The notes under the pieces were generated by a model. The model had not been told where the DNA came from. It did not search any database and saw only the letters and a program-made list of their open reading frames with translations. DNA of 64,000 bases from Prasinococcaceae sp. CCMP 1430 (taxonomy: Eukaryota > Plantae > Prasinodermophyta), in assembly GCA_013416795.1 (NCBI GenBank), contig RQSC01000630.1, positions 165,742-229,741 of the forward strand. Direction: 5' to 3'. Position 1 is the stretch's first letter, and each line of letters opens with the position of its first letter. Made by a program: the position numbers and the translations under genes. Positions 6,200-64,000 of the stretch are shown here, piece by piece.

Positions 6200-7130
6200 A
6201 TGGAGGATATCACCGGCGGCGAGCGCGGGCCTGCCGCCGCTGAGCTGCGCAGGCGGTTCGCAGCGTCGTTCGAGTTGCGCACGAAGCGGCTCATGGAGGA
6301 CTGCGCCCGCAACGAGGAGGGAACTGAGTGCCGCCACTTCCGGAGCGTCGAGATGCCCGTGATCGGAAGTGCGTGCGCGTGCGTGCGCGCCCGGCCGCCC
6401 GCCCACCCGCCGCGCGTGGGTGTACAGGTCTCGCTAGCCGTTCTTCCTCTCACACGCTCGCGCGTTTGTATGCGCACGCATTCGCCCAATCACATCCTTG
6501 CCCACACGCACAGCGCACCTTGCCGCGACCGGCTTGCTCGCGCTCGGCACGGGAGCTATAGTCGCAAACACCGTGAGGCGAGGCGCGCCCAAGCTGCCAA
6601 GGATCGTCTCAGGCGGTCTCGGCCTGGCGGGCGCTTTGTCAACCTGGCCTTTCTTTAGCGACTTGTCGTACTTTCGCGATGCGATACGCGGTAAGCTCAT
6701 GGACGCGGAGCGGAGCGTGTTCATCGACTGCATCTGCAACCCTCTGCTGGAAATCGACGAGGAAGGGCCCACGGGGGGACCCGCCGGGGATTCCGGCGGC
6801 GAGCGAAGGCCCGCGGAGAGCTCCGCGGCCGAACACTTTGGGGGCGGCGAGGAGGATAGCTTTGCCAGCGGCGGTGGGCTGCAGGCACTTTTTGAGCGCG
6901 AGGGACGCTCGGCGCCCGCCGGGCTGCTTGAGCGCCTGAGGGAGTGCAAGAAGAGGCGCTCGCGCATGGAGGAGCGGGAGTGGATGGCTGCGACGGGCAG
7001 GGACGTAGACGGCCTCGGCGGCGTGAGCCAGATCAACGTGGGCACGTGGGACGATAGTTGGGAGGAGGGGGTCAGAGACGCCAGCAAGCCCGGCGACGAC
7101 GGCGGTGGCAGCGAAGGGCGCAGCATCTGA
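6200..7130 (+). CDS. Hypothetical protein with two hydrophobic segments; exons 6200-6368 and 6514-7130
   Basis: A phase-1 GT-AG intron joins ORFs 6089 and 6498 in frame. Hydrophobic stretches LAATGLLALGTGAIVA and IVSGGLGLAGALSTWPFF; acidic tail. Confidence 0.6.
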
Positions 7131-7301
7131 GCATCGTGGATCGTACGGCCAGGTAATAATTGCTGAGGCTCTCTATGCTGTCTGGAAAATTAACTAGCGG
7201 CACGACCGCCTCCGTGCCTCCGCCGTACGATAAGCAGCCCCTTTCACATGCCCCGACTCGCCCGCGCGCCTCGCGCAGGCAGCGGCGCCGCGCGCCCGCG
7301 C

Positions 7302-10300
7302 TCAGCCAGTGTTGCGCATGCTCGCCGCGATGGCCTTGATGGTGCGAAGAAGCGGCTCGGTCCACAGCTCCAGCTCCTCGGCGTTGTCCTCGGCCTCGGC
7401 CTTGCGCGTGCGGCTCAGCAAGATCACCTGCGAGGCGTTGAGCGGATCAAGGTACAGGTTGCGCTTGTCGAGCCTTTCCTTCAGCTGGGGCGTCTCGCCG
7501 AGCAGCTCATCCTTCTCCGTGACGCGCATCACCTGCTCGACGCTCGCGTCATACTCGTTCTTGATGAGGCCGTATACGCGATCGGCGACCTCCTTGTCTT
7601 CGCAGATCCGCGAGTACTCCTTGGCGATCTCCATGTTGGCCTTGACGAGCGCCTGCTGGACGTTTGCGAGGAAGTTGCGGAAGAACGGCCAACGGCGGTA
7701 CATGTCCCGCACCTCCTCGAGGCGCTCCTCAGAATCACCGATGTACGTGGACAGCGCCGAGCCAATGCCGTACCACGCCGGCAGAGTGACGCGGCACTGC
7801 GACCAGCCGAACACCCACGGGATGGCCCGCAGCGACTTCTTCGTGCGGTCGCCCGACTTGCGCTTGGCGGGCCTGCTACCCACATTGAGCGCACCAATCT
7901 CGTAGCAAATGGTTGTCGAGTAGTAGTAGTCGTAGAAGCCCTCCGTGTCGTCGGTGAGGCCCCTGTACGCCTTCTCGCCCCGTCCCGCCAGCTCGCCCAT
8001 CAGCGACATGAACTTCGCCTCGTCGGGAAGCCGCGGGCACGTTTTGTCGGTGTTGGCCTGCAGCAGCCCCGTCATGCCCACGCCCAGCTCGTACTTGGCT
8101 GTGTCGGCGTGGCCGTACTTGTAGGTGACCGTCTCGCCCTGCTCTGTGAACTTGATGGCGCCGTTGACCGTGCCGGCCGGCTGCGCCAGGATGGACTCGT
8201 GCGCGGGGCCCGCGCCGCGCCCCACGGTGCCGCCACGGCCGTGGAAGAGCTTCCAGCCCGCGCCGGCGCCCTCGCAGATGGTCTGGACGGAGCGCTGCGC
8301 CGAGTAGAGCGAGAAGGCGCTGCTCATGATGCCGCCGTCCTTGGCGCTGTCCGAGTAGCCGATCATGATGTCCTGCACGTTGCCGGCCGACGTGAGGTAC
8401 GAGCGGTACACGTCGGACTCAAGGAGCGAGGTCAGCGCCTCCGGCATGCCCTGCAGGTCCGGGATGGTCTCGAAGAGCGGGCTCACGCGAATTTTGGAGT
8501 GGGTCCACGAGCCGGCCGCCGCGTCATACTCCACGAGCCCCTTGCCAACCACCCAGCCGAGGGCGAGAACCTCCAGGACATTCGAGGCCGTGCGGGCCAT
8601 GGAGATGTTGTACTCGCCGAGGGCCTCCACGTCCACGATGTCAGTCACCGTGGCCACCGCCTGGAGAACCTCCACGCTCTGGACGGTGTCGGCCGTGCAC
8701 GTGTCCATCGCCGCGATGAGCTCGTCCTCCGTGGGCGGCGCGTCAGTGATGGCGGCCTCGAGGACCTTCACGCGCTCCGCCTCGTCGAGCTCAGCGTAGT
8801 TGGGGCAGCGCCCGAGGGTGCGCAGAATCTCGTCCACAGCCTCGATGTGGCGCGTGCTCTCCTGGCGGATGTCGAGCGCCTGCAGGCGAAAGCCGAAGGT
8901 CTCCACCAGGCGGATGAGGTCCTGCAGGGGGCCGGCGGCGGCCGAGGTGTCGCCGCCCTCGGTGAGGAGGTCCTGGATGAGCTTGAGGTCCGCGAGCAGC
9001 TCCGCCGGGGATTCGTACTGGTCCTCGCCAGGGCTCACACCTGGGATGGGGTCGATGTTGTACTCGATGTCGACGATGAGCTCCTTGGCGCGCGCGGCGC
9101 CCTCGTCCAGCGTCTCGTTAAGGTCGTACAGGTTCTGGTTGAGCATACGCAGGCGCTGCTCGAGCTTGTGCCTGATGACGCGCAGCTTCGCGCGGTAGGG
9201 CTCGCGGTAGCAGTAGGAGGGGTCCTCGAAGGCGGGAATCTTGTCCTTGACGGACTGATCGGCGTCGAGGGCCAGGCGCTCAAAGATGTCGCCCTCGGTC
9301 TTGGAAAACTTGTCCGAGTGCAGCAGGCGGTAGTGCAGATCCCTCACGCGCTTGATGTACTCGCCCACGGCCGTGCGTGAGGACAGCAGGCTCGCCATCA
9401 CGGTGGTCTCCGGGTACACGAACGGGTTGCCGTCGCGGTCGCCGCCGATCCAGCTGCCGAACTCCATGCAGGTCTCGATGCCACCGCTGGGGCAGTTCAG
9501 GCCGCTGAGCTTCTGGCCGAGCGAGCCCTCGCTCGCGGTGCCGTAGTGCTTCTCGATGGAGCGCTGCGCCGAGCGGTAGACCTCGGGGACGGCCTCGAAA
9601 AGGCTCAGGCGGAAGTAGTTGAGGCCCGCGTTGATCTCGTCAAGCACGGTGGGCTTGCGGTTGCGCATCTCATCGGTGAGCCACAGCGTCTCGACTTCCA
9701 CGGCCAGCTTGCTCATGAGCACGCGCTGCGGCAGCTCGCGCGCGAGCCACTGCTTGCACAGGTGGAACATGCGCGAGAGCAGCGTGAGGATCACGGCGCG
9801 GCGCGCCTCGGTGGGGTGCGCGGTGAACACCGGGAGGAACTTCGACTCCGCGATGAGGCCCTCCACGTCCCCGCGCGACATGCCGGCCTCCTTGAAGGTG
9901 CGCATGGTCTCGTCCCAGCTCCCCTTCCACGTGACGCCCTCGCCCTTGTCGTCGCCGATGAGCTCGGCGCGCCTGAGGAAGTGCTCGTGCGCCTCTTCGA
10001 CGACGTTGAGCAGCGCGGCGTACGATCCCAGCGCGCGCACCACCTGCGTGATCTCCTGGGCGCTGAGCCCGTTCAGCGTGCTCAGCAGCTCCTCCTCGAG
10101 GCTCGCCTTCTCGCTCTCGTCGGCGGTGCGCATGGTGGCGAACCCGTCGCGCAGCGAGTGGATGAGGGCCACCATCTCCTCGCCCTCGTGCTGCTTGATG
10201 ACGCTGTCGAGCATCCAGCAGGTCATGCCTTCGAGCTCGCGGAAGCGCTCCTCGTCGCTCAGCTCCTCGCTGAAGCCGCCGATGAGGGGCGGGTCGTCGG

Positions 10301-10313
10301 ACACCGCCGGCGA
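7302..10313 (-). CDS. PPC: Phosphoenolpyruvate carboxylase, bacterial-type (C-terminal RNTG), intronless; in frame with an upstream ChlM fragment
   Basis: VFTAHPTEARR, FGSWIGGDRDGNPFV, MIGYSDSAKDGG, FHGRGGTVGRG, SLRAIPWVFGWSQ, ...SMRNTG-stop; no plant N-terminal SIDAQ phosphorylation motif. Confidence 0.97.
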   Translation of the reverse strand, partial: SPAVSDDPPLIGGFSEELSDEERFRELEGMTCWMLDSVIKQHEGEEMVALIHSLRDGFATMRTADESEKASLEEELLSTLNGLSAQEITQVVRALGSYAALLNVVEEAHEHFLRRAELIGDDKGEGVTWKGSWDETMRTFKEAGMSRGDVEGLIAESKFLPVFTAHPTEARRAVILTLLSRMFHLCKQWLARELPQRVLMSKLAVEVETLWLTDEMRNRKPTVLDEINAGLNYFRLSLFEAVPEVYRSAQRSIEKHYGTASEGSLGQKLSGLNCPSGGIETCMEFGSWIGGDRDGNPFVYPETTVMASLLSSRTAVGEYIKRVRDLHYRLLHSDKFSKTEGDIFERLALDADQSVKDKIPAFEDPSYCYREPYRAKLRVIRHKLEQRLRMLNQNLYDLNETLDEGAARAKELIVDIEYNIDPIPGVSPGEDQYESPAELLADLKLIQDLLTEGGDTSAAAGPLQDLIRLVETFGFRLQALDIRQESTRHIEAVDEILRTLGRCPNYAELDEAERVKVLEAAITDAPPTEDELIAAMDTCTADTVQSVEVLQAVATVTDIVDVEALGEYNISMARTASNVLEVLALGWVVGKGLVEYDAAAGSWTHSKIRVSPLFETIPDLQGMPEALTSLLESDVYRSYLTSAGNVQDIMIGYSDSAKDGGIMSSAFSLYSAQRSVQTICEGAGAGWKLFHGRGGTVGRGAGPAHESILAQPAGTVNGAIKFTEQGETVTYKYGHADTAKYELGVGMTGLLQANTDKTCPRLPDEAKFMSLMGELAGRGEKAYRGLTDDTEGFYDYYYSTTICYEIGALNVGSRPAKRKSGDRTKKSLRAIPWVFGWSQCRVTLPAWYGIGSALSTYIGDSEERLEEVRDMYRRWPFFRNFLANVQQALVKANMEIAKEYSRICEDKEVADRVYGLIKNEYDASVEQVMRVTEKDELLGETPQLKERLDKRNLYLDPLNASQVILLSRTRKAEAEDNAEELELWTEPLLRTIKAIAASMRNTG

Positions 10314-10745
10314 CTTCTCGATGGCGGCCGCGGCGCGCTTCTCGGCCTCGCCGGTCATGGCGTCGGAGATGTCGGTGGCGTACACCTGCGCGCCGCGCAG
10401 CGCGAGCGGCGCGGTGAGCGAGCCCGTGCCGCAGCCGCAGTCGACGACGCTGATGCCGTCGGCGCCGCCCTCGGCGTCCACCCACGCGAGCACCTTCTCC
10501 ACCGTCTGCGCGTGGCCCTCGCGGATGTCCAGCTGCACCTTGTTCACCTCGTCCGTCTCGCCGTAGATCTTCTGCCAGCGCTCGAAGCCCGTGCCGTTGA
10601 AGTAGTCCTTGACGCTCTTCATCTCGTCGCCGCCCGCCGCGGCGGCCATCTCCGAGCGGCGCTTCTCCGGGTCGGACTCGGCGAGCAGCGCCGCCGCGCC
10701 CATGCCCGCGGCGACCACGCCCGCCGCGAGGCCGCCCGCCCACTC
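10314..10745 (-). CDS. CHLM: Mg-protoporphyrin IX methyltransferase, N-terminal half only (5' cut by n at 10746; 3' runs into PEPC)
   Basis: DPEKRR...KDYFNGTGFERWQKIYGETDEVNKVQLDIREGH, SAM motif VVDCGCGTG, ATDISDAM. The expected C-terminal half (LDVxIHYP motif onward) is absent. Confidence 0.93.
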
Positions 10746-10746
10746 N

Positions 10747-11044
10747 TGGCCAGCCACGCCATGATCGCGTCGAGCGAGAAGTAGGCGACGCCCAGCGCCA
10801 GCCAAAAGAACGGGAACGTGGAGGCGTCGAAGCCCGCCATCATGAAGGACGTGATCGCGAAGATGAACACGCCGGTCTGGCCGACGAGCGAGCGCACGAC
10901 GAACTTTGCGAACATGTAGGGGACCACGCTGTACAGTCCCTCCTCGTGCTCGTTGAGGTACACCACTCGATCATTGATGAGCACCGGCAGGTTGGCGAAG
11001 CTTAGCAGGGCGCCGGTCGTGATGCTGATGTACAGGAAGCTCAC
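10747..11044 (-). CDS. ABCG-type transporter membrane-domain exon (fragment)
   Basis: After a CAG acceptor at 11045-11047: VSFLYISITTGALLSFANLPVLINDRVVYLNEHEEGLYSVVPYMFAKF...FWLALGVAYFSLDAIMAWLA. The DRxVYxxExxxGLY pattern is ABCG-typical. Ends at an n; no NBD nearby. Confidence 0.8.
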
Positions 11045-12702
11045 CTGCAAGCGCGCGCATGGGGGGGTGGCGCCGCTGCGCAGCGCCGCGCCGGCCGCCG
11101 GCAGGCTGGGGCTGGGGATGGGCCCGCGAGAGGGGGGCGGCGAAGGGGGAGAGGGAGGCGCGCGCGCCAGGCCAGCGGCGGGAGCGAGCGCGCGCCGCCC
11201 CGCGCGGAATGAGGCGATGAGTGAGAGGGGTCGCACGTGCGCGGGCGATGACAGACAGGCAGCTTGCTGTCGGTGGTGCGCGGCAGGCGAGTGTGCACGC
11301 GCGGGCGGGCGGGCATACACTGTCGCAGTCACCATCACGTGCTGAGCGCAGGCAGGAGCATCTGCGCGCGGCATCATCATCGGTCGAGAGCGGTCTGGGC
11401 GGTGGGGCGGTGCGTGACGCACACTGGCGGACGAGGCGGAGTCCCAACCGAACCACCGGCCGGCGATGCGGCAGCGGGTGAGCAGGAGTGAGGGTCGCCG
11501 CACGCGGCGCGCGAGTGCGGAGCAGTACAGCATTGTTGGTAGTGCTGCAATGCCAGCCAGCACCGGTGGGGCCGGTTTGCGGGCGGTGACGAGCCCCCCA
11601 CGTGCGCCCGGGCGCCCCGCGGGCTGTGGGTGGGGGCTCGGTCGGTTTGTGCTGCGACGGCACCGCGCTGCAACCCTAACGCCCCACATACGGTTTGAAA
11701 GGAGGGTCCAATGCCCACTTCCGATAATGACTGGCGCGCGCGCGACCGCGCGCGCGCGCGCGCGCGCGTGGGAAAAGATCTGCGCCGGCTTCCCGCGCGC
11801 GTCGTCGTCCGTTCCCAGTTCAGTTCAGTTCGCCTGCGAGGGTTCGCGGCGAGCGGCGCCGGCGCGCCACAGCGCGCCACGGCGCGCGGAGGGTTGGGTG
11901 CTTGCCATGGCGCCCCGGGCCGCTCGGCGCGGCTCCCGCCGGCTCCGATCCACCTCCTGCGCGCGCGGCGGCGGGATCGGGGGCGCGGACGGGTCGCGCG
12001 CTGAGTGACCGCACCAGCCCGCACGCCCCCCTCCCTCACACACACACGCCTCCCCGTGCCTGCACCCTCACGTCCCGACGCACGCGCGCGCGAGCGCGCG
12101 CGTGCGCCGCCCGCCGAGCCAAACGCACAAATGCCTGCGTTTCAAACTCCTCCCCCCTTGTTCAGCTGCTGTGCGCCCGTCCGCACGCTGCGCCTCCGGC
12201 CGCGGATCCGCGGCACACTCCGCTCCCGCGACTGCCCGGCCGACGCTGCTGACCTGTGACCGATCGATCGATCGACCCGAGCCAGATCGACACGACGAAC
12301 GACGACGAAAGCCGGCCGGCCCGCGCCGCCGCCGCAGAGGCGCGGATCCGGATCCGCGCCTGGGTCGCCGGTTTTGACCGCCGCGCGACCGCCGGCGACG
12401 GCGGCGGGATTGTCATCCAAATAACGGGGGCCGCGCGGCGGGGCCCTTCCTTCCGCGGCCCCATCAATTCGCGCTCCCTTCTTCCTCGTGCGCTCTCGCG
12501 GGGCGGACGCCAGGGATTCCATTTCACATTGAGTTTTTGTTTTGGTTTTGGGGAATCCATAGATGCATCTTGATATACGATGTGGTACGCAGATGGTGCG
12601 GATTCGCTGCGAGCGCCGCGCGGGTGTTTGCCAGCGCGCGCGCGCTCCCCTTCCCCTTCCGCCAACAGCCCGCGCGCGCCGGTGCGCGCCCCCGCCGCGT
12701 AG

Positions 12703-15255: not shown

Positions 15256-15534
<279 letters not shown>

Positions 15535-59261: not shown

Positions 59262-60094
59262 TTGCGCACGCCCCTTTCGCCCCCTCATCCCTCCGCTAAC
59301 CCCCAATCGACGCCATATGCCCTCGCTTGCGCCGTGCGCGGTCGCCCTCAGGCCGCTCATGGCGGCGTCCGCGCGACTCAGAGGGTCGCCGAGGCGCGCG
59401 TCAAGGCCCACCAGGAGGCGGCCGAGCGCCTCGCCGCCGCAACCCAGCGCCGCACCGAAGTCGCTGTCGCAAAGGAGGCACGTCTGGCCGCCGCGGCCGC
59501 CCGTCGCGCTGCAGCGCGCCTTCGCGCGAGCAGTGCGCCCTCGACGACCGCTGGCGTATCCGCGAGGCGCGCTGAGGCCGCCGCGAGGCGCCGCACCGAG
59601 GCGCTCGCGCGCGTCAGAGAGAGGGCCGCCACGTCTTCGCGCCGTGCGGCTGCTGCCGCCGAGCGCATGGCTTCCGAGCGCGTCTTCCGCGCCGAGCGCT
59701 CAAAGACCCGCGTGGGGGCGGCCGCTCGCCGCCGCACGGCGGCCCTCGCCGCCGTGTGCGCCAAGGCGCGCGCCGCATCTCGCGGAGCGCTGTCCCAGGC
59801 GTCCGAGCGTCGTGCCAAGGCGGCCGCGGCGCTGGAGGCCGCTGCGGCCGCCGGCGAGAAGCGCCGCTCCGAGGCCGCTAAGCGCCGTGCCTCCCGGTTC
59901 GGTTCCATGAGCGCCGGAAAGGCCCTCAAGGAAGTCTCCGAGGAGCTCAAGGCGGGCGCTCCCACTCGCATCCGCACTGCCGACCTTGAGGCGGCCGCCA
60001 CGCGCCGCAGGCGCTTCATGGAGTCACGCGTGCAGGTCGCGCGCACCTACGCTGTGGAGCGCGTCGAGCGCGCGCACAAGCAACGCGCTGCTGC
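59262..60094 (+). CDS. Ala/Arg-rich helical ORF fragment, cut by n at 60095
   Basis: Open frame with a repetitive RxAAA helix pattern; no clear start codon. Confidence 0.4.
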
Positions 60095-60095
60095 N

Positions 60096-61272
60096 GGCGC
60101 GGGCGCGGCGGCGCAGGCGCGGGCGCGATGGCAGCGCGGGGGAAGTGGCAGATGGACTTCGGCTGCCGCGACTCCATGGGCGGCGTCGTCGACCCGCTCG
60201 GCTACGAGGCCAGGGCGTACGCCGAGGTGCGAACGGCGCTGCGCGACCGGCGGAGAGCGCGGAGCGGGCGGCGCGGCGGTCGCGAGCTGACGCGCGCGCC
60301 GGGCGCGCTCCTCCGCGCGAAATTCGCAGGACGAAAGCGGCAAGGGGCGCCTGCGCATCGATGAGGCCAAGCTCAGCGCAGCCAAGATGAAGGTGAGCGG
60401 TGCGGGGCAGGGCTCGCACGCACGCGGCGCCACGGTCCTTAGGGTTGGTGCACGCTAGGGGCGCGCGCGCCCGGCGACCCGGATCTGGCGCCAGGTGACG
60501 CGCGCGCCGCACGACCTCGGCCTGACGTGCGCTCGCACCCCGCCCTGCACCCTGCCTTTTCTGGTGGCCGAAGCGCGCTTGGGCGACGGCGACGAAGCCA
60601 GTGCAGAGCATTGGCATGATGGGCTTCATGCTGTGGATGAGTGGCGCGTCGCTCAACATCTTCTCGATGATGACGGTCGGCAGCGCCCTCTGGCAGCCCC
60701 TCTCGGCCGTGCTCAAGGCGGACGACGTCTTCTCGCCCTTCGCCGACGACCGCAACAACGTGCTGCTGCCCAAGCTTGTCTACTGCCTGATCAACTTTGG
60801 CGGGATGATGCTCGGCCTGTGGAAGCTCAACACGCTCGGCTTGCTGCCCACGCACGTGAGCGACTGGGAGTCGGGGCTGCCGCCGCCGCTCTCTGCTGAG
60901 ATGGCCACCGCGGGCGTGGCGCTGTAGATCGCTCCGGCGCGCGTGCCATGCCACCGGCGCTCGCCCCACTGTATCATAGTCCGTACACACGCCAGCGCAC
61001 CGCACTCCGCCCCGTGGCCGCTGGCGCCGCGGCGCGCGGCGCACAGATGCTCGCGCAGCACAGAAAGAGCTCTCCCGTGGGTACATTTACCCCCGTGCAC
61101 GATCACGGACTGCGGCCGCGACCTCCGAGCGCAGCTGGGCCGCAATCTCTTCGACATCCAGCGGCCATCGGAGATCGCCTGGTCAAAGCACGGGGATTTT
61201 TGCGGCGGATTTTTGCGACGGATTGTTGATCTCCGGAGGTGCGTGTTTTCGGGCGCCTTCCGTCGAATTGGC
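60096..61272 (+). repeat. 1177-bp segment, copy 1 (copy 2 at 62449-63625)
   Basis: Constant offset of 2353; no differences seen by eye. Confidence 0.93.
60128..60927 (+). CDS. EMC4: ER membrane protein complex subunit 4, copy 1; exons 60128-60226, 60330-60392, 60574-60927
   Basis: KWQMDF..DPLGY; RAWATATKPVQSIGMMGFMLWMSG...SALWQP...KLNTLGLLPTHVSDW. Confidence 0.93.
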
Positions 61273-61736
61273 GCCACCCGCCCTTCCCTCTCCCCCTCCC
61301 CCCGCTCTCTCCCCCAGGCGGCCGCCCGGGCCGGCCGGGCGGCGGTGTGGAGCGAGCGAGGCGTCGCTCGTCACGTGCCGCATCAAATCGGACGTCGCCG
61401 CGTGGTATCGCCGCGTTCGTGCGGGGGCGGGAAACGGCGCTTCGAAACGGCGCGCCCCCGCCGGCGCGCGCGAAAAACAAAAAAAAGCCGCCGAAGCCGC
61501 GAAAAAAAAGCGCGTTTCGAGGGCGCGTGCCCGCGCGGAAAACCGCAACCTTTCGGCGGGGATGAAGGGTGTGAAATGACGTCGCGAAGCGCGAATCATG
61601 GACCCTGTATGCAGAATTAACCCAATCCTTTTTTTTTGGGGGGGGGGCGCGGCGAGCGAGCCCGCTTTCGCGCGCGCGCGCGCGGGCCAAAAACGCGCGA
61701 GCGCTGCGCGGTGCGGGGGCGTGCCACAGTGCGCGC

Positions 61737-61868
61737 NNNNNNNNNNNNNNNNNNNNNNNNNNNNNNNNNNNNNNNNNNNNNNNNNNNNNNNNNNNNNNNN
61801 NNNNNNNNNNNNNNNNNNNNNNNNNNNNNNNNNNNNNNNNNNNNNNNNNNNNNNNNNNNNNNNNNNNN
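61737..61868. other. Scaffold gap (132 N)
   Basis: Read directly. Confidence 0.99.
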
Positions 61869-61899: not shown

Positions 61900-62440
61900 A
61901 TGTCGGCGCGCCTCGACGCCGTCTTCCGCGCCGTGCAGGCTGATGGGGCGGGCGGCGGCGCTGCCGTGGGTGGCACGGGTGGCGGAGTTCCTGCGGCGCC
62001 GGGCGCGAACCGCCGCGCGCTCGTGGACGAGCGCTCGTGGGAGGAGCTCTCTGAGGACGAGCATGGCAACCTGCGCGGCACGGCGCGAAAGGGCGGCGCG
62101 GCGGGTGCGGGCGCGGCGTATCTCGCGGCGCAGCACACCCCTGAGGAGCTTGCGCGAGCTGCGAAGCGCGCACGGCGTGGCGTCATTCGTTACGTTGTCC
62201 TCGTGCTGGACTGCTCGAAGGCGGCGGCGGCAACCGATGTGAGGCCGAGCCGAGCAGGCGCGACGGCGGTGGCCGCGGCTGCGCTCGTGCGCGAGTTCTT
62301 CGACGCAAACCCGCTGTCGCACATGGCGGTGCTGGCGATGCACGACGGGGTGTGCGTGCGCCTGTCTGAGCTCAGCGCGAGCACGGACACCCACCTCGCC
62401 GCCATTCGCGCGGCACCCTCGCCGTCAGGCGACGCGAGCG
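61900..62440 (+). CDS. GTF2H2: TFIIH subunit p44/Ssl1, N-terminal vWA part only (fragment)
   Basis: ERSWEELSEDEHGNLR, RRGVIRYVVLVLDCS, DVRPSR, REFFDANPLSHM, SGDAS; sequence then switches into the EMC4 upstream region. Confidence 0.9.
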
Positions 62441-62448
62441 TAGCCGCG

Positions 62449-63625
62449 GGCGCGGGCGCGGCGGCGCAGGCGCGGGCGCGATGGCAGCGCGGGGGAAGTG
62501 GCAGATGGACTTCGGCTGCCGCGACTCCATGGGCGGCGTCGTCGACCCGCTCGGCTACGAGGCCAGGGCGTACGCCGAGGTGCGAACGGCGCTGCGCGAC
62601 CGGCGGAGAGCGCGGAGCGGGCGGCGCGGCGGTCGCGAGCTGACGCGCGCGCCGGGCGCGCTCCTCCGCGCGAAATTCGCAGGACGAAAGCGGCAAGGGG
62701 CGCCTGCGCATCGATGAGGCCAAGCTCAGCGCAGCCAAGATGAAGGTGAGCGGTGCGGGGCAGGGCTCGCACGCACGCGGCGCCACGGTCCTTAGGGTTG
62801 GTGCACGCTAGGGGCGCGCGCGCCCGGCGACCCGGATCTGGCGCCAGGTGACGCGCGCGCCGCACGACCTCGGCCTGACGTGCGCTCGCACCCCGCCCTG
62901 CACCCTGCCTTTTCTGGTGGCCGAAGCGCGCTTGGGCGACGGCGACGAAGCCAGTGCAGAGCATTGGCATGATGGGCTTCATGCTGTGGATGAGTGGCGC
63001 GTCGCTCAACATCTTCTCGATGATGACGGTCGGCAGCGCCCTCTGGCAGCCCCTCTCGGCCGTGCTCAAGGCGGACGACGTCTTCTCGCCCTTCGCCGAC
63101 GACCGCAACAACGTGCTGCTGCCCAAGCTTGTCTACTGCCTGATCAACTTTGGCGGGATGATGCTCGGCCTGTGGAAGCTCAACACGCTCGGCTTGCTGC
63201 CCACGCACGTGAGCGACTGGGAGTCGGGGCTGCCGCCGCCGCTCTCTGCTGAGATGGCCACCGCGGGCGTGGCGCTGTAGATCGCTCCGGCGCGCGTGCC
63301 ATGCCACCGGCGCTCGCCCCACTGTATCATAGTCCGTACACACGCCAGCGCACCGCACTCCGCCCCGTGGCCGCTGGCGCCGCGGCGCGCGGCGCACAGA
63401 TGCTCGCGCAGCACAGAAAGAGCTCTCCCGTGGGTACATTTACCCCCGTGCACGATCACGGACTGCGGCCGCGACCTCCGAGCGCAGCTGGGCCGCAATC
63501 TCTTCGACATCCAGCGGCCATCGGAGATCGCCTGGTCAAAGCACGGGGATTTTTGCGGCGGATTTTTGCGACGGATTGTTGATCTCCGGAGGTGCGTGTT
63601 TTCGGGCGCCTTCCGTCGAATTGGC
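62449..63625 (+). repeat. 1177-bp segment, copy 2
   Basis: Matches 60096-61272. Confidence 0.93.
62481..63280 (+). CDS. EMC4: ER membrane protein complex subunit 4, copy 2
   Basis: Same exon structure and translation as copy 1. Confidence 0.9.
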
Positions 63626-64000
63626 CCAACCCCGCGGCCGCGGCCCCCCCCCCCCCCCCCTCGCCGCGCCGCCCGTGCGCGGCGCGGCGCGCGCGTCAAA
63701 TTCCATATGACCTGCGCTCAGCGCCGAATCGAACCCTACCCTTTAAAACGTCGGGAGCGAACCCTATTCCCCTCGCCCGCCGTGTCGCGCATTTCGCGCG
63801 GCCGCTCGAAAAAAAAAACGCCGGGGCGCGCCGCGCCGGCGGGGCGGCAGGATACCTCTGGAAGCGTTTTCGCGCACATTTGAAGGGCGCGGTCCGCGAT
63901 TTCGCAGGTGTGTGGGCATGGGGACCGCGCGGGCGGGCGGGCATTTCGGCTGCCGCGGCGCCGTCGCGCGATCTCGCGCGTGGGGCACGCGCGCGCGCGG

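What the first reader, a model, noticed from the sequence alone, without database searches (positions are those of the whole stretch)
7302..10745. Seamless in-frame fusion of the ChlM N-terminal half to a full PEP carboxylase
Seen: one stop-free ORF with no n or gap at the junction. It reads ChlM (hydrophobic N-terminal stretch, YFNGTGFERW, DCGCGTG, TDIS) up to ...EAEKRAAAAIEK, then SPAVSDDPPLIGGF, then an apparently complete PEPC. The rest of ChlM is not found downstream, so this is not a nested gene inside an intron. Known: ChlM is a plastid membrane-associated chlorophyll-synthesis enzyme, and half of its Rossmann fold is unlikely to be active. Inference: if real, the ChlM N-terminus could give PEPC plastid or membrane targeting, or a SAM-sensing appendage, which is relevant to C4-like carbon concentration. 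A misjoin is at least as likely, because this scaffold contains another seamless in-frame chimera near 62440.
Basis: partly seen in the sequence, partly recalled or inferred. Interest (0 to 1): 0.7.

Follow-up and report, generated by a model that had tools for sequence, protein, structure and literature searches.

The report
ChlM-PEPC fusion is an assembly misjoin
The apparent fusion of half a chlorophyll-synthesis enzyme to a PEP carboxylase exists only in this assembly: independent DNA and RNA data show two separate, ordinary genes wrongly stitched together at a 22-base look-alike stretch beside a gap.

Summary
The ORF is in the window as described. It runs 7302-10805 on the minus strand and reads ChlM residues ~6-107, then a complete bacterial-type PEPC, with no stop. 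The rest of ChlM is nowhere in the 64 kb.

The junction is not supported by any independent data.
- Contigs from two DNA runs follow PEPC up to 10338 and then diverge. One 6.1-kb contig carries 1081 other bases there and rejoins the window at 11052.
- The ChlM piece (10317-10745) lies on separate DNA and RNA contigs. These continue with ...AAGKGVMPTF, the proper ChlM sequence.
- A culture RNA contig covers PEPC exactly from 7166 to 10294, at depth 873 against 117 for ChlM. The first AUG is at 10226.
- The two paths share only 22 bases (10317-10338).
- A single N at 10746 is followed by a 313-bp internal piece of an ABC-2 transporter gene (10747-11059). That piece also belongs elsewhere.

So window 10339-11051 holds two foreign fragments and an N in place of 1081 true bases, most likely a mis-filled gap. 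No ChlM-PEPC fusion turned up among 5.8 billion proteins, and the closest relatives have both genes standing alone.

What is really there is an ordinary intronless PEPC gene of 974 aa. The scan had not reported this before. Interest is low.

The parts
7302..10226 (-). True PEPC coding sequence: bacterial-type phosphoenolpyruvate carboxylase, 974 aa plus stop, starting MTCWMLDSV... and ending ...MRNTG. It has no intron in this genome.
   Evidence: Pfam PF00311 covers profile 11-919/919. It is 71% identical over 980 aa to relative P0124. ATG 10226 is the first AUG in the RNA-supported leader, and the Met is conserved in relative L001.
7166..10294 (-). Extent of the PEPC transcript contig in a culture RNA run. 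It is colinear with the genome, with a 5' leader of at least 68 nt and a 3' UTR of about 136 nt.
   Evidence: read laying X15 record 10 is 3129 nt, all of it laid on 7166..10294, with 0 other letters and depth 873.
10317..10338 (.). 22-nt GC-rich stretch (minus strand GCGCGCCGCGGCCGCCATCGAG) shared by the real ChlM gene and the real PEPC 5' flank. This is the point of the false join.
   Evidence: PEPC contigs fit up to 10338 and ChlM contigs fit from 10317, and each then runs on unlike the window. The 22-mer occurs once in the window. Both true paths were translated.
10339..10745 (-). Foreign fragment: the 5' part of the ChlM (Mg-protoporphyrin IX methyltransferase) gene, whose real locus is elsewhere in the genome.
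   Evidence: Separate contigs X1 rec4 (823 nt), X4 rec26 (850 nt), RNA X15 rec12 (806 nt, depth 117) and X16 rec21 cover 10317 onward and continue for hundreds of bases into the ChlM C-half. PDB 4qdj match.
10746..10746 (.). Single N: an unclosed seam between two unrelated fragments.
   Evidence: locates it. Contigs on either side have loose ends pointing away from each other at 10745 and 10747.
10747..11059 (-). Foreign fragment: a 313-bp internal piece of an ABC-2 type (ABCG-like) transporter membrane domain, whose real locus is elsewhere.
   Evidence: Pfam PF01061 profile 52-143/211 only. X1 rec6 (3395 nt), X4 rec28 (9171 nt) and RNA X15 rec14 (2624 nt) match just this piece and run on unlike the window on both sides.
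11052..11730 (-). True upstream flank of the PEPC locus. In independent DNA it is joined to 10338 through 1081 bases that the window lacks.
   Evidence: X4 record 23 (6104 nt) lays 11730..11052, then 1081 other letters, then 10338..7000 (tables 5 and 8).

Best explanation
The ChlM-PEPC open reading frame is an assembly artefact, most likely a mis-filled gap. The true locus is an ordinary, intronless, bacterial-type PEPC gene: ATG at 10226, stop at 7302-7304, mRNA 5' end near 10294. About 1.08 kb of very GC-rich sequence lies upstream of it, and this assembly failed to reconstruct that stretch. In its place the assembly carries two short pieces of genes from elsewhere in the genome. One is 429 bp of the ChlM 5' region, joined to the PEPC flank through a 22-nt stretch that both loci share. 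The other is 313 bp from the middle of an ABC-2 transporter gene, joined to the far flank through 8 shared bases. A single N sits where the two extensions failed to meet. Stop codons are rare at 68% GC and the shared 22-mer happens to lie in a compatible frame, so the ChlM piece reads straight into the PEPC leader and coding sequence. Shown: the breakpoints, the separate contigs, the alternative 1081-bp path, the separate transcripts, and the absence of the fusion in relatives. Inferred: the specific cause (a gap filler or local re-assembly following a short repeat), and that ATG 10226 is the real start codon.
For: (1), DNA. X1 rec1 and X4 rec23 fit 7000..10338 with 0 mismatches and then diverge. 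X4 rec23 bridges 10338 to 11052 with 1081 other letters, so 713 window bases are replaced. (2). The ChlM piece 10317..10745 sits on its own small contigs in both DNA runs and both RNA runs, and these run on for about 386-416 bases before 10317. Translated, the continuation gives ...EAEKRAAAAIE-AAGKGVMPTF, which matches relatives' ...EIERAGKGKLPTF. (3), RNA. The PEPC contig ends at 10294 at depth 873, and the ChlM contig has depth 117. There is zero RNA contig coverage of 10295-10316 in the culture run, and no record bridges that interval. (4). DNA depths of the PEPC, ChlM and ABC pieces in X1 are 421, 318 and 377, all single-copy-like. The contigs pass the 22-mer without branching, so junction k-mers are absent. 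(5). The single N at 10746 is flanked by an internal ABC-2 fragment that likewise belongs to other contigs. (6). No protein of 631-2007 aa combines ChlM with PEPcase. (7). The nearest relatives have a stand-alone 294-aa ChlM and a stand-alone PEPC with no ChlM in the 715 nt upstream. (8). There is no ATG in the leader 10294-10227, and the chance of an open frame there is about 0.46.
Against: All laid runs are Logan contigs, not raw reads. Contigs show presence rather than absence and can drop rare variants, and 57 further pieces were not listed. I could not read the 1081 replacing bases or fetch the true ChlM locus: two metagenome scans found nothing, and the exact PEPC product is not on record. 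The junction falls only about 30 codons before the PEPC start and in frame, which looks tidy for an accident. The method by which this assembly was built is unknown to me, so the gap-filling mechanism is inferred.
Confidence: 0.93

Rival explanations
1. A real, expressed fusion gene in which the ChlM N-terminal half supplies PEPC with a targeting, membrane-anchoring or SAM-sensing appendage.
For: The ORF is open and in frame in the window. The join lies just upstream of the PEPC domain start. RNA runs hold words from both halves.
Against: No DNA or RNA contig bridges the junction. RNA contigs for the two halves are separate, differ 7-fold in depth, and the ChlM one continues into its own C-terminal half. 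No such fusion exists in the protein database or in the closest relatives. Half a Rossmann fold is unlikely to fold on its own (established knowledge).
Confidence: 0.02
2. A real but private rearrangement: in the particular culture or isolate used for this assembly, fragments of ChlM and of an ABC transporter gene were inserted upstream of PEPC, for example by microhomology-mediated repair. This would create a non-functional run-on ORF that other isolates lack.
For: The joins show microhomology of 22 nt and 8 nt, as real template-switch events do. The source of the assembly is not known with certainty.
Against: Runs flagged as possible sources (X1 and others) lack the join, and all 14 DNA holders show the same 0.98 word share. 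An N sits between the two inserted pieces. The ChlM N-half depth is not doubled in X1, and its contig does not branch at 10317. The window shows other gap-associated oddities.
Confidence: 0.04
3. ChlM exon 1 is followed by a very long intron that holds PEPC as a nested gene.
For: Both pieces are on the same strand, and ChlM stops at a plausible exon-like boundary.
Against: No ChlM C-half lies anywhere downstream in the 64-kb window. The ChlM DNA contigs, not just the RNA contigs, continue directly from 10317 into the C-half coding sequence, so there is no intron at that point at all.
Confidence: 0.01

Closest known systems
Bacterial-type PEP carboxylase (BTPC) of green algae and plants, Pfam PF00311
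   Same: There is a full-length PEPcase match (profile 11-919/919). The C-terminal tetrapeptide is RNTG, which by established knowledge marks bacterial-type as opposed to plant-type (QNTG) PEPC. The best named relatives are streptophyte and streptophyte-algal PEPCs at about 38-40% identity in the N-terminal region.
   Different: Nothing unusual remains once the false ChlM extension is removed. At 974 aa it is shorter than the streptophyte BTPCs of 1150-1200 aa listed, and its length is close to that of bacterial enzymes.
Mg-protoporphyrin IX O-methyltransferase ChlM (PDB 4qdj; Pfam PF07109 C-terminal domain)
   Same: The window piece aligns to ChlM residues 6-107, including the YFNxTGFxRW stretch and SAM motif I DxGCGxG. 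It is 84% identical to the metagenomic full-length ChlM P0001.
   Different: Only the N-terminal half is in the window. The C-terminal half sits on other contigs of the same organism. The window fragment is a misplaced copy of part of the real gene, not a truncated paralogue.
Gap-filling or local re-assembly errors in draft genome assemblies (false joins at short repeats, leftover single-N seams)
   Same: Foreign pieces of 300-430 bp replace a hard, very GC-rich stretch. The joins are at 22-nt and 8-nt shared stretches. A single N lies between the two inward extensions. Other single Ns in the window abut a microsatellite (15534) and a 1.19-kb duplicate (60095).
   Different: The software and data behind this assembly are not known to me. 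The published PacBio assembly of the presumed species is described as 22 gap-free chromosomes (PMC7455551), whereas this genome has at least 184 pieces and contains Ns, so it seems to be another assembly.

Membership tests
Phosphoenolpyruvate carboxylase (PF00311) | Full-length match to the PEPcase family model above its gathering score | tested here: met
   848 bits against a cut-off of 22.4, profile 11-919/919
Phosphoenolpyruvate carboxylase (PF00311) | Bacterial-type subclass: C-terminal RNTG rather than QNTG, and no plant-type N-terminal SIDAQLR phospho-site (criteria from established knowledge) | tested here: met
   The translation ends ...SMRNTG, and no SIDAQ-like motif lies near the N-terminus (read directly)
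Phosphoenolpyruvate carboxylase (PF00311) | Catalytic residues and enzymatic activity | not tested
   The residue-level check was not done because it was not needed for the question
ChlM, Mg-protoporphyrin IX methyltransferase | N-terminal region plus SAM-binding motif I | tested here: met
   4qdj residues 6-107 aligned, E 8e-32
ChlM, Mg-protoporphyrin IX methyltransferase | C-terminal Mg-por_mtran_C domain (PF07109) in the same polypeptide | tested here: not met
   PF07109 does not match the window ORF, and there is no C-half in the 64 kb. It lies on separate contigs of the organism
Genuine natural gene fusion (Rosetta-stone protein) | Junction present in independent DNA data | tested here: not met
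   Two DNA runs diverge from the window at 10338 and 10317, and one bridges with 1081 other bases
Genuine natural gene fusion (Rosetta-stone protein) | A single transcript spanning both parts | tested here: not met
   The RNA contigs are separate, with depth 873 against 117, and none bridges. These are contigs only, not raw reads
Genuine natural gene fusion (Rosetta-stone protein) | Same architecture in related organisms | tested here: not met
   No ChlM+PEPcase protein was found among candidates of 631-2007 aa. Relatives have stand-alone genes

The most novel reading that the evidence does not exclude
The join is a real, isolate-specific microhomology-mediated rearrangement. It would place a ChlM N-terminal fragment in frame ahead of PEPC in the very culture that was assembled, and the independent runs examined would not capture it.
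Probability: 0.04. Interest if true: 0.35.

Novelty: not a real feature. Interest (0 to 1): 0.05.

Why it matters
The finding matters as a warning, not as biology. A gene model built on this stretch would report a spurious ChlM-PEPC protein. That could mislead inferences about plastid targeting of PEPC or C4-like carbon concentration in an early-diverging green picoalga. It would also hide the organism's real, complete ChlM and the real PEPC promoter region. The same signature may underlie other 'gapless in-frame chimeras' noted elsewhere in this genome: a single N, short foreign fragments, and joins at short GC-rich repeats. Those findings should be checked against independent reads before being believed.

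Tried and rejected
- I tried to fetch the true PEPC upstream sequence. An exact 36-nt pattern made of 19 window bases plus the loose end found nothing in metagenome contigs. The search for related loci with the first 250 aa of PEPC also found no relative there.
- The look-up of encoding contigs with the 974-aa PEPC product found no exact record.
- The organism's own ChlM and PEPC are not in the 5.8-billion-protein collection. The best hits are 84% and 68% identical, so the true loci could not be pulled as DNA.
- The nested-gene or long-intron idea is rejected. The ChlM DNA contigs run straight on from 10317, and there is no C-half in the window.
- I considered whether the PEPC coding region extends upstream of ATG 10226, because the in-frame upstream peptide ...FRELEG loosely resembles the LR..V motif of bacterial PEPC N-termini. 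Against this, the RNA contig ends at 10294 with no upstream AUG, and the Met is conserved in the relative. I therefore keep 10226 as the start, as an inference.
- The supplements of PMC7455551 held as text do not mention PEPC or ChlM.
- A literature search for such a fusion found nothing relevant.

Full report
**Observation.** The window holds a stop-free minus-strand ORF, 7302..10805, of 1167 aa.
- Pfam finds a complete PEPcase domain on aa 178-1147 of window:7302-10745:- (profile 11-919 of 919, E 1e-254). It finds only the first ~45 positions of several SAM-methyltransferase models on aa 100-141.
- Against solved structures, aa 39-141 align to residues 6-107 of the 238-residue Synechocystis ChlM (4qdj, E 8e-32).
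- tblastn with full-length ChlM relatives finds only their N-terminal halves in the whole 64-kb window.

Beyond that N the same strand carries only profile positions 52-143 of an ABC-2 transporter membrane domain. That is a second gene fragment cut off abruptly.

**Independent data.** A word search found the stretch 9900-10745 in 20 runs from 15 studies, with a word share of 0.98 in all 14 DNA holders and 0.59-0.88 in RNA runs. I laid contigs of two DNA runs (X1, X4), one probable culture RNA run (X15) and one metatranscriptome (X16) on 7000-11800. No record bridges the junction.
- The PEPC-bearing DNA contigs (X1 rec1, X4 rec23) fit 7000..10338 without a mismatch and then run on unlike the window.
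- X4 rec23, 6104 nt long, continues through 1081 other letters and rejoins the window at 11052..11730.
- The ChlM piece 10317..10745 lies on separate contigs in all four runs. These extend about 390-415 bases before 10317.
- Translated, that extension reads ...EAEKRAAAAIE-AAGKGVMPTF. This is the expected continuation of ChlM; compare ...EIERAGKGKLPTFEPLDL in the 84%-identical relative P0001.
- The window piece 10747..11059 likewise matches only the middle of much longer contigs (3.4 kb and 9.2 kb DNA, 2.6 kb RNA) that diverge on both sides.

The PEPC path and the ChlM path share just 22 bases, 10317-10338. That 22-mer occurs once in the window.

**Transcripts.** In the culture RNA run the PEPC contig is 3129 nt and lies exactly on 7166..10294 at depth 873. 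The ChlM contig has depth 117. The leader 10294-10227 has no ATG, so 10226 is the first AUG. The corresponding Met is conserved in the closest relative's gene: ours reads ...LEGMTCWMLD and L001 reads ...LERMLCWMLD. The real product is therefore most likely a 974-aa PEPC ending in RNTG. By established knowledge that ending marks the bacterial-type subclass.

**Relatives.** I searched the ChlM part while restricting candidates to 631-2007 aa. Three long ChlM-containing proteins came back. All carry the complete ChlM including PF07109, and none carries PEPcase. The nearest ChlM relatives are ordinary proteins of 260-317 aa. The nearest PEPC (P0124, 1006 aa, from a Tara Oceans contig) has no ChlM similarity in its 715-nt upstream region.

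**Explanation.** Window 10339-11051 is a patch: 429 bp of ChlM, an N, and 313 bp of an ABC transporter gene, standing in place of 1081 true bases. The joins sit at short shared stretches of 22 nt and 8 nt. This is what a gap filler or local re-assembler produces when it extends inward from both gap edges along wrong paths and fails to meet. The specific cause is inferred; the breakpoints are shown. The tidy in-frame reading needs no biology. At 68% GC the 37 codons between the junction and the ATG stay open with P about 0.46, and first-stage reading selects for the in-frame cases.

DNA depths in X1 (421, 318 and 377 for the three pieces) and the unbranched contigs argue against an extra real copy of the ChlM N-half.

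**Caveats.**
- Only contigs, not raw reads, could be laid. Contigs cannot prove absence of a rare variant.
- I could not retrieve the 1081 replacing bases.
- A private rearrangement in the assembled culture therefore keeps a few percent.

**Organism.** This fits the green-lineage ChlM hits. It also fits the 69.8% GC and 25.3 Mb reported in PMC7455551, against 68% GC here and 25.3 million letters of contigs in X1. The many 2024 runs match the JGI-sequenced mutation-accumulation lines of PMC11884799. That paper's assembly is described as 22 gapless chromosomes, so this window seems to come from a different, more fragmented assembly.

**Verdict.** This is not a real feature. The real content is an ordinary PEPC gene. 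The finding's value is as a flag for similar artefacts in this assembly.

Noticed in passing
window 60090-61279 and 62443-63632: A 1190-bp direct duplicate at 99.7% identity. Its first copy starts at the single N at 60095, and an N-run (61737-61868) lies between the copies. It is probably a redundant gap-flank duplication rather than biology.
   Followed up: partly
window 15260-15534: A perfect hexanucleotide microsatellite array of about 270 bp runs right up to the single N at 15534. So single Ns in this assembly mark unresolved seams, not ambiguous bases.
   Followed up: partly
L001:136-802 versus window 10205-10193: The closest relative's PEPC (Tara Oceans metagenome contig) has an intron of about 670-680 nt directly after ...MLCWMLDTIITQ. 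This genome has none there: its RNA contig is colinear with the DNA. The database model P0124 starts inside that intron, so its first ~30 residues are probably spurious.
   Followed up: partly
window 7000-7166: Convergent transcripts nearly touch. A plus-strand RNA contig ends at 7153 and the PEPC RNA contig ends at 7166, leaving a 12-base gap between them. This fits a compact genome.
   Followed up: no
window 11186-11800: There is no RNA contig coverage in the culture run upstream of the patch. The long 'ORF' 10619..11689 is low-complexity read-through except for the ABC-2 fragment.
   Followed up: no
other pieces of the same genome (earlier notes): Several other 'gapless in-frame chimeras' have been flagged in this genome (rps4-MAPKK, PAS-HisKA/NOT3, and a LIG1-copy mosaic). 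They deserve the same contig or read check, because this one proved to be an assembly patch.
   Followed up: no
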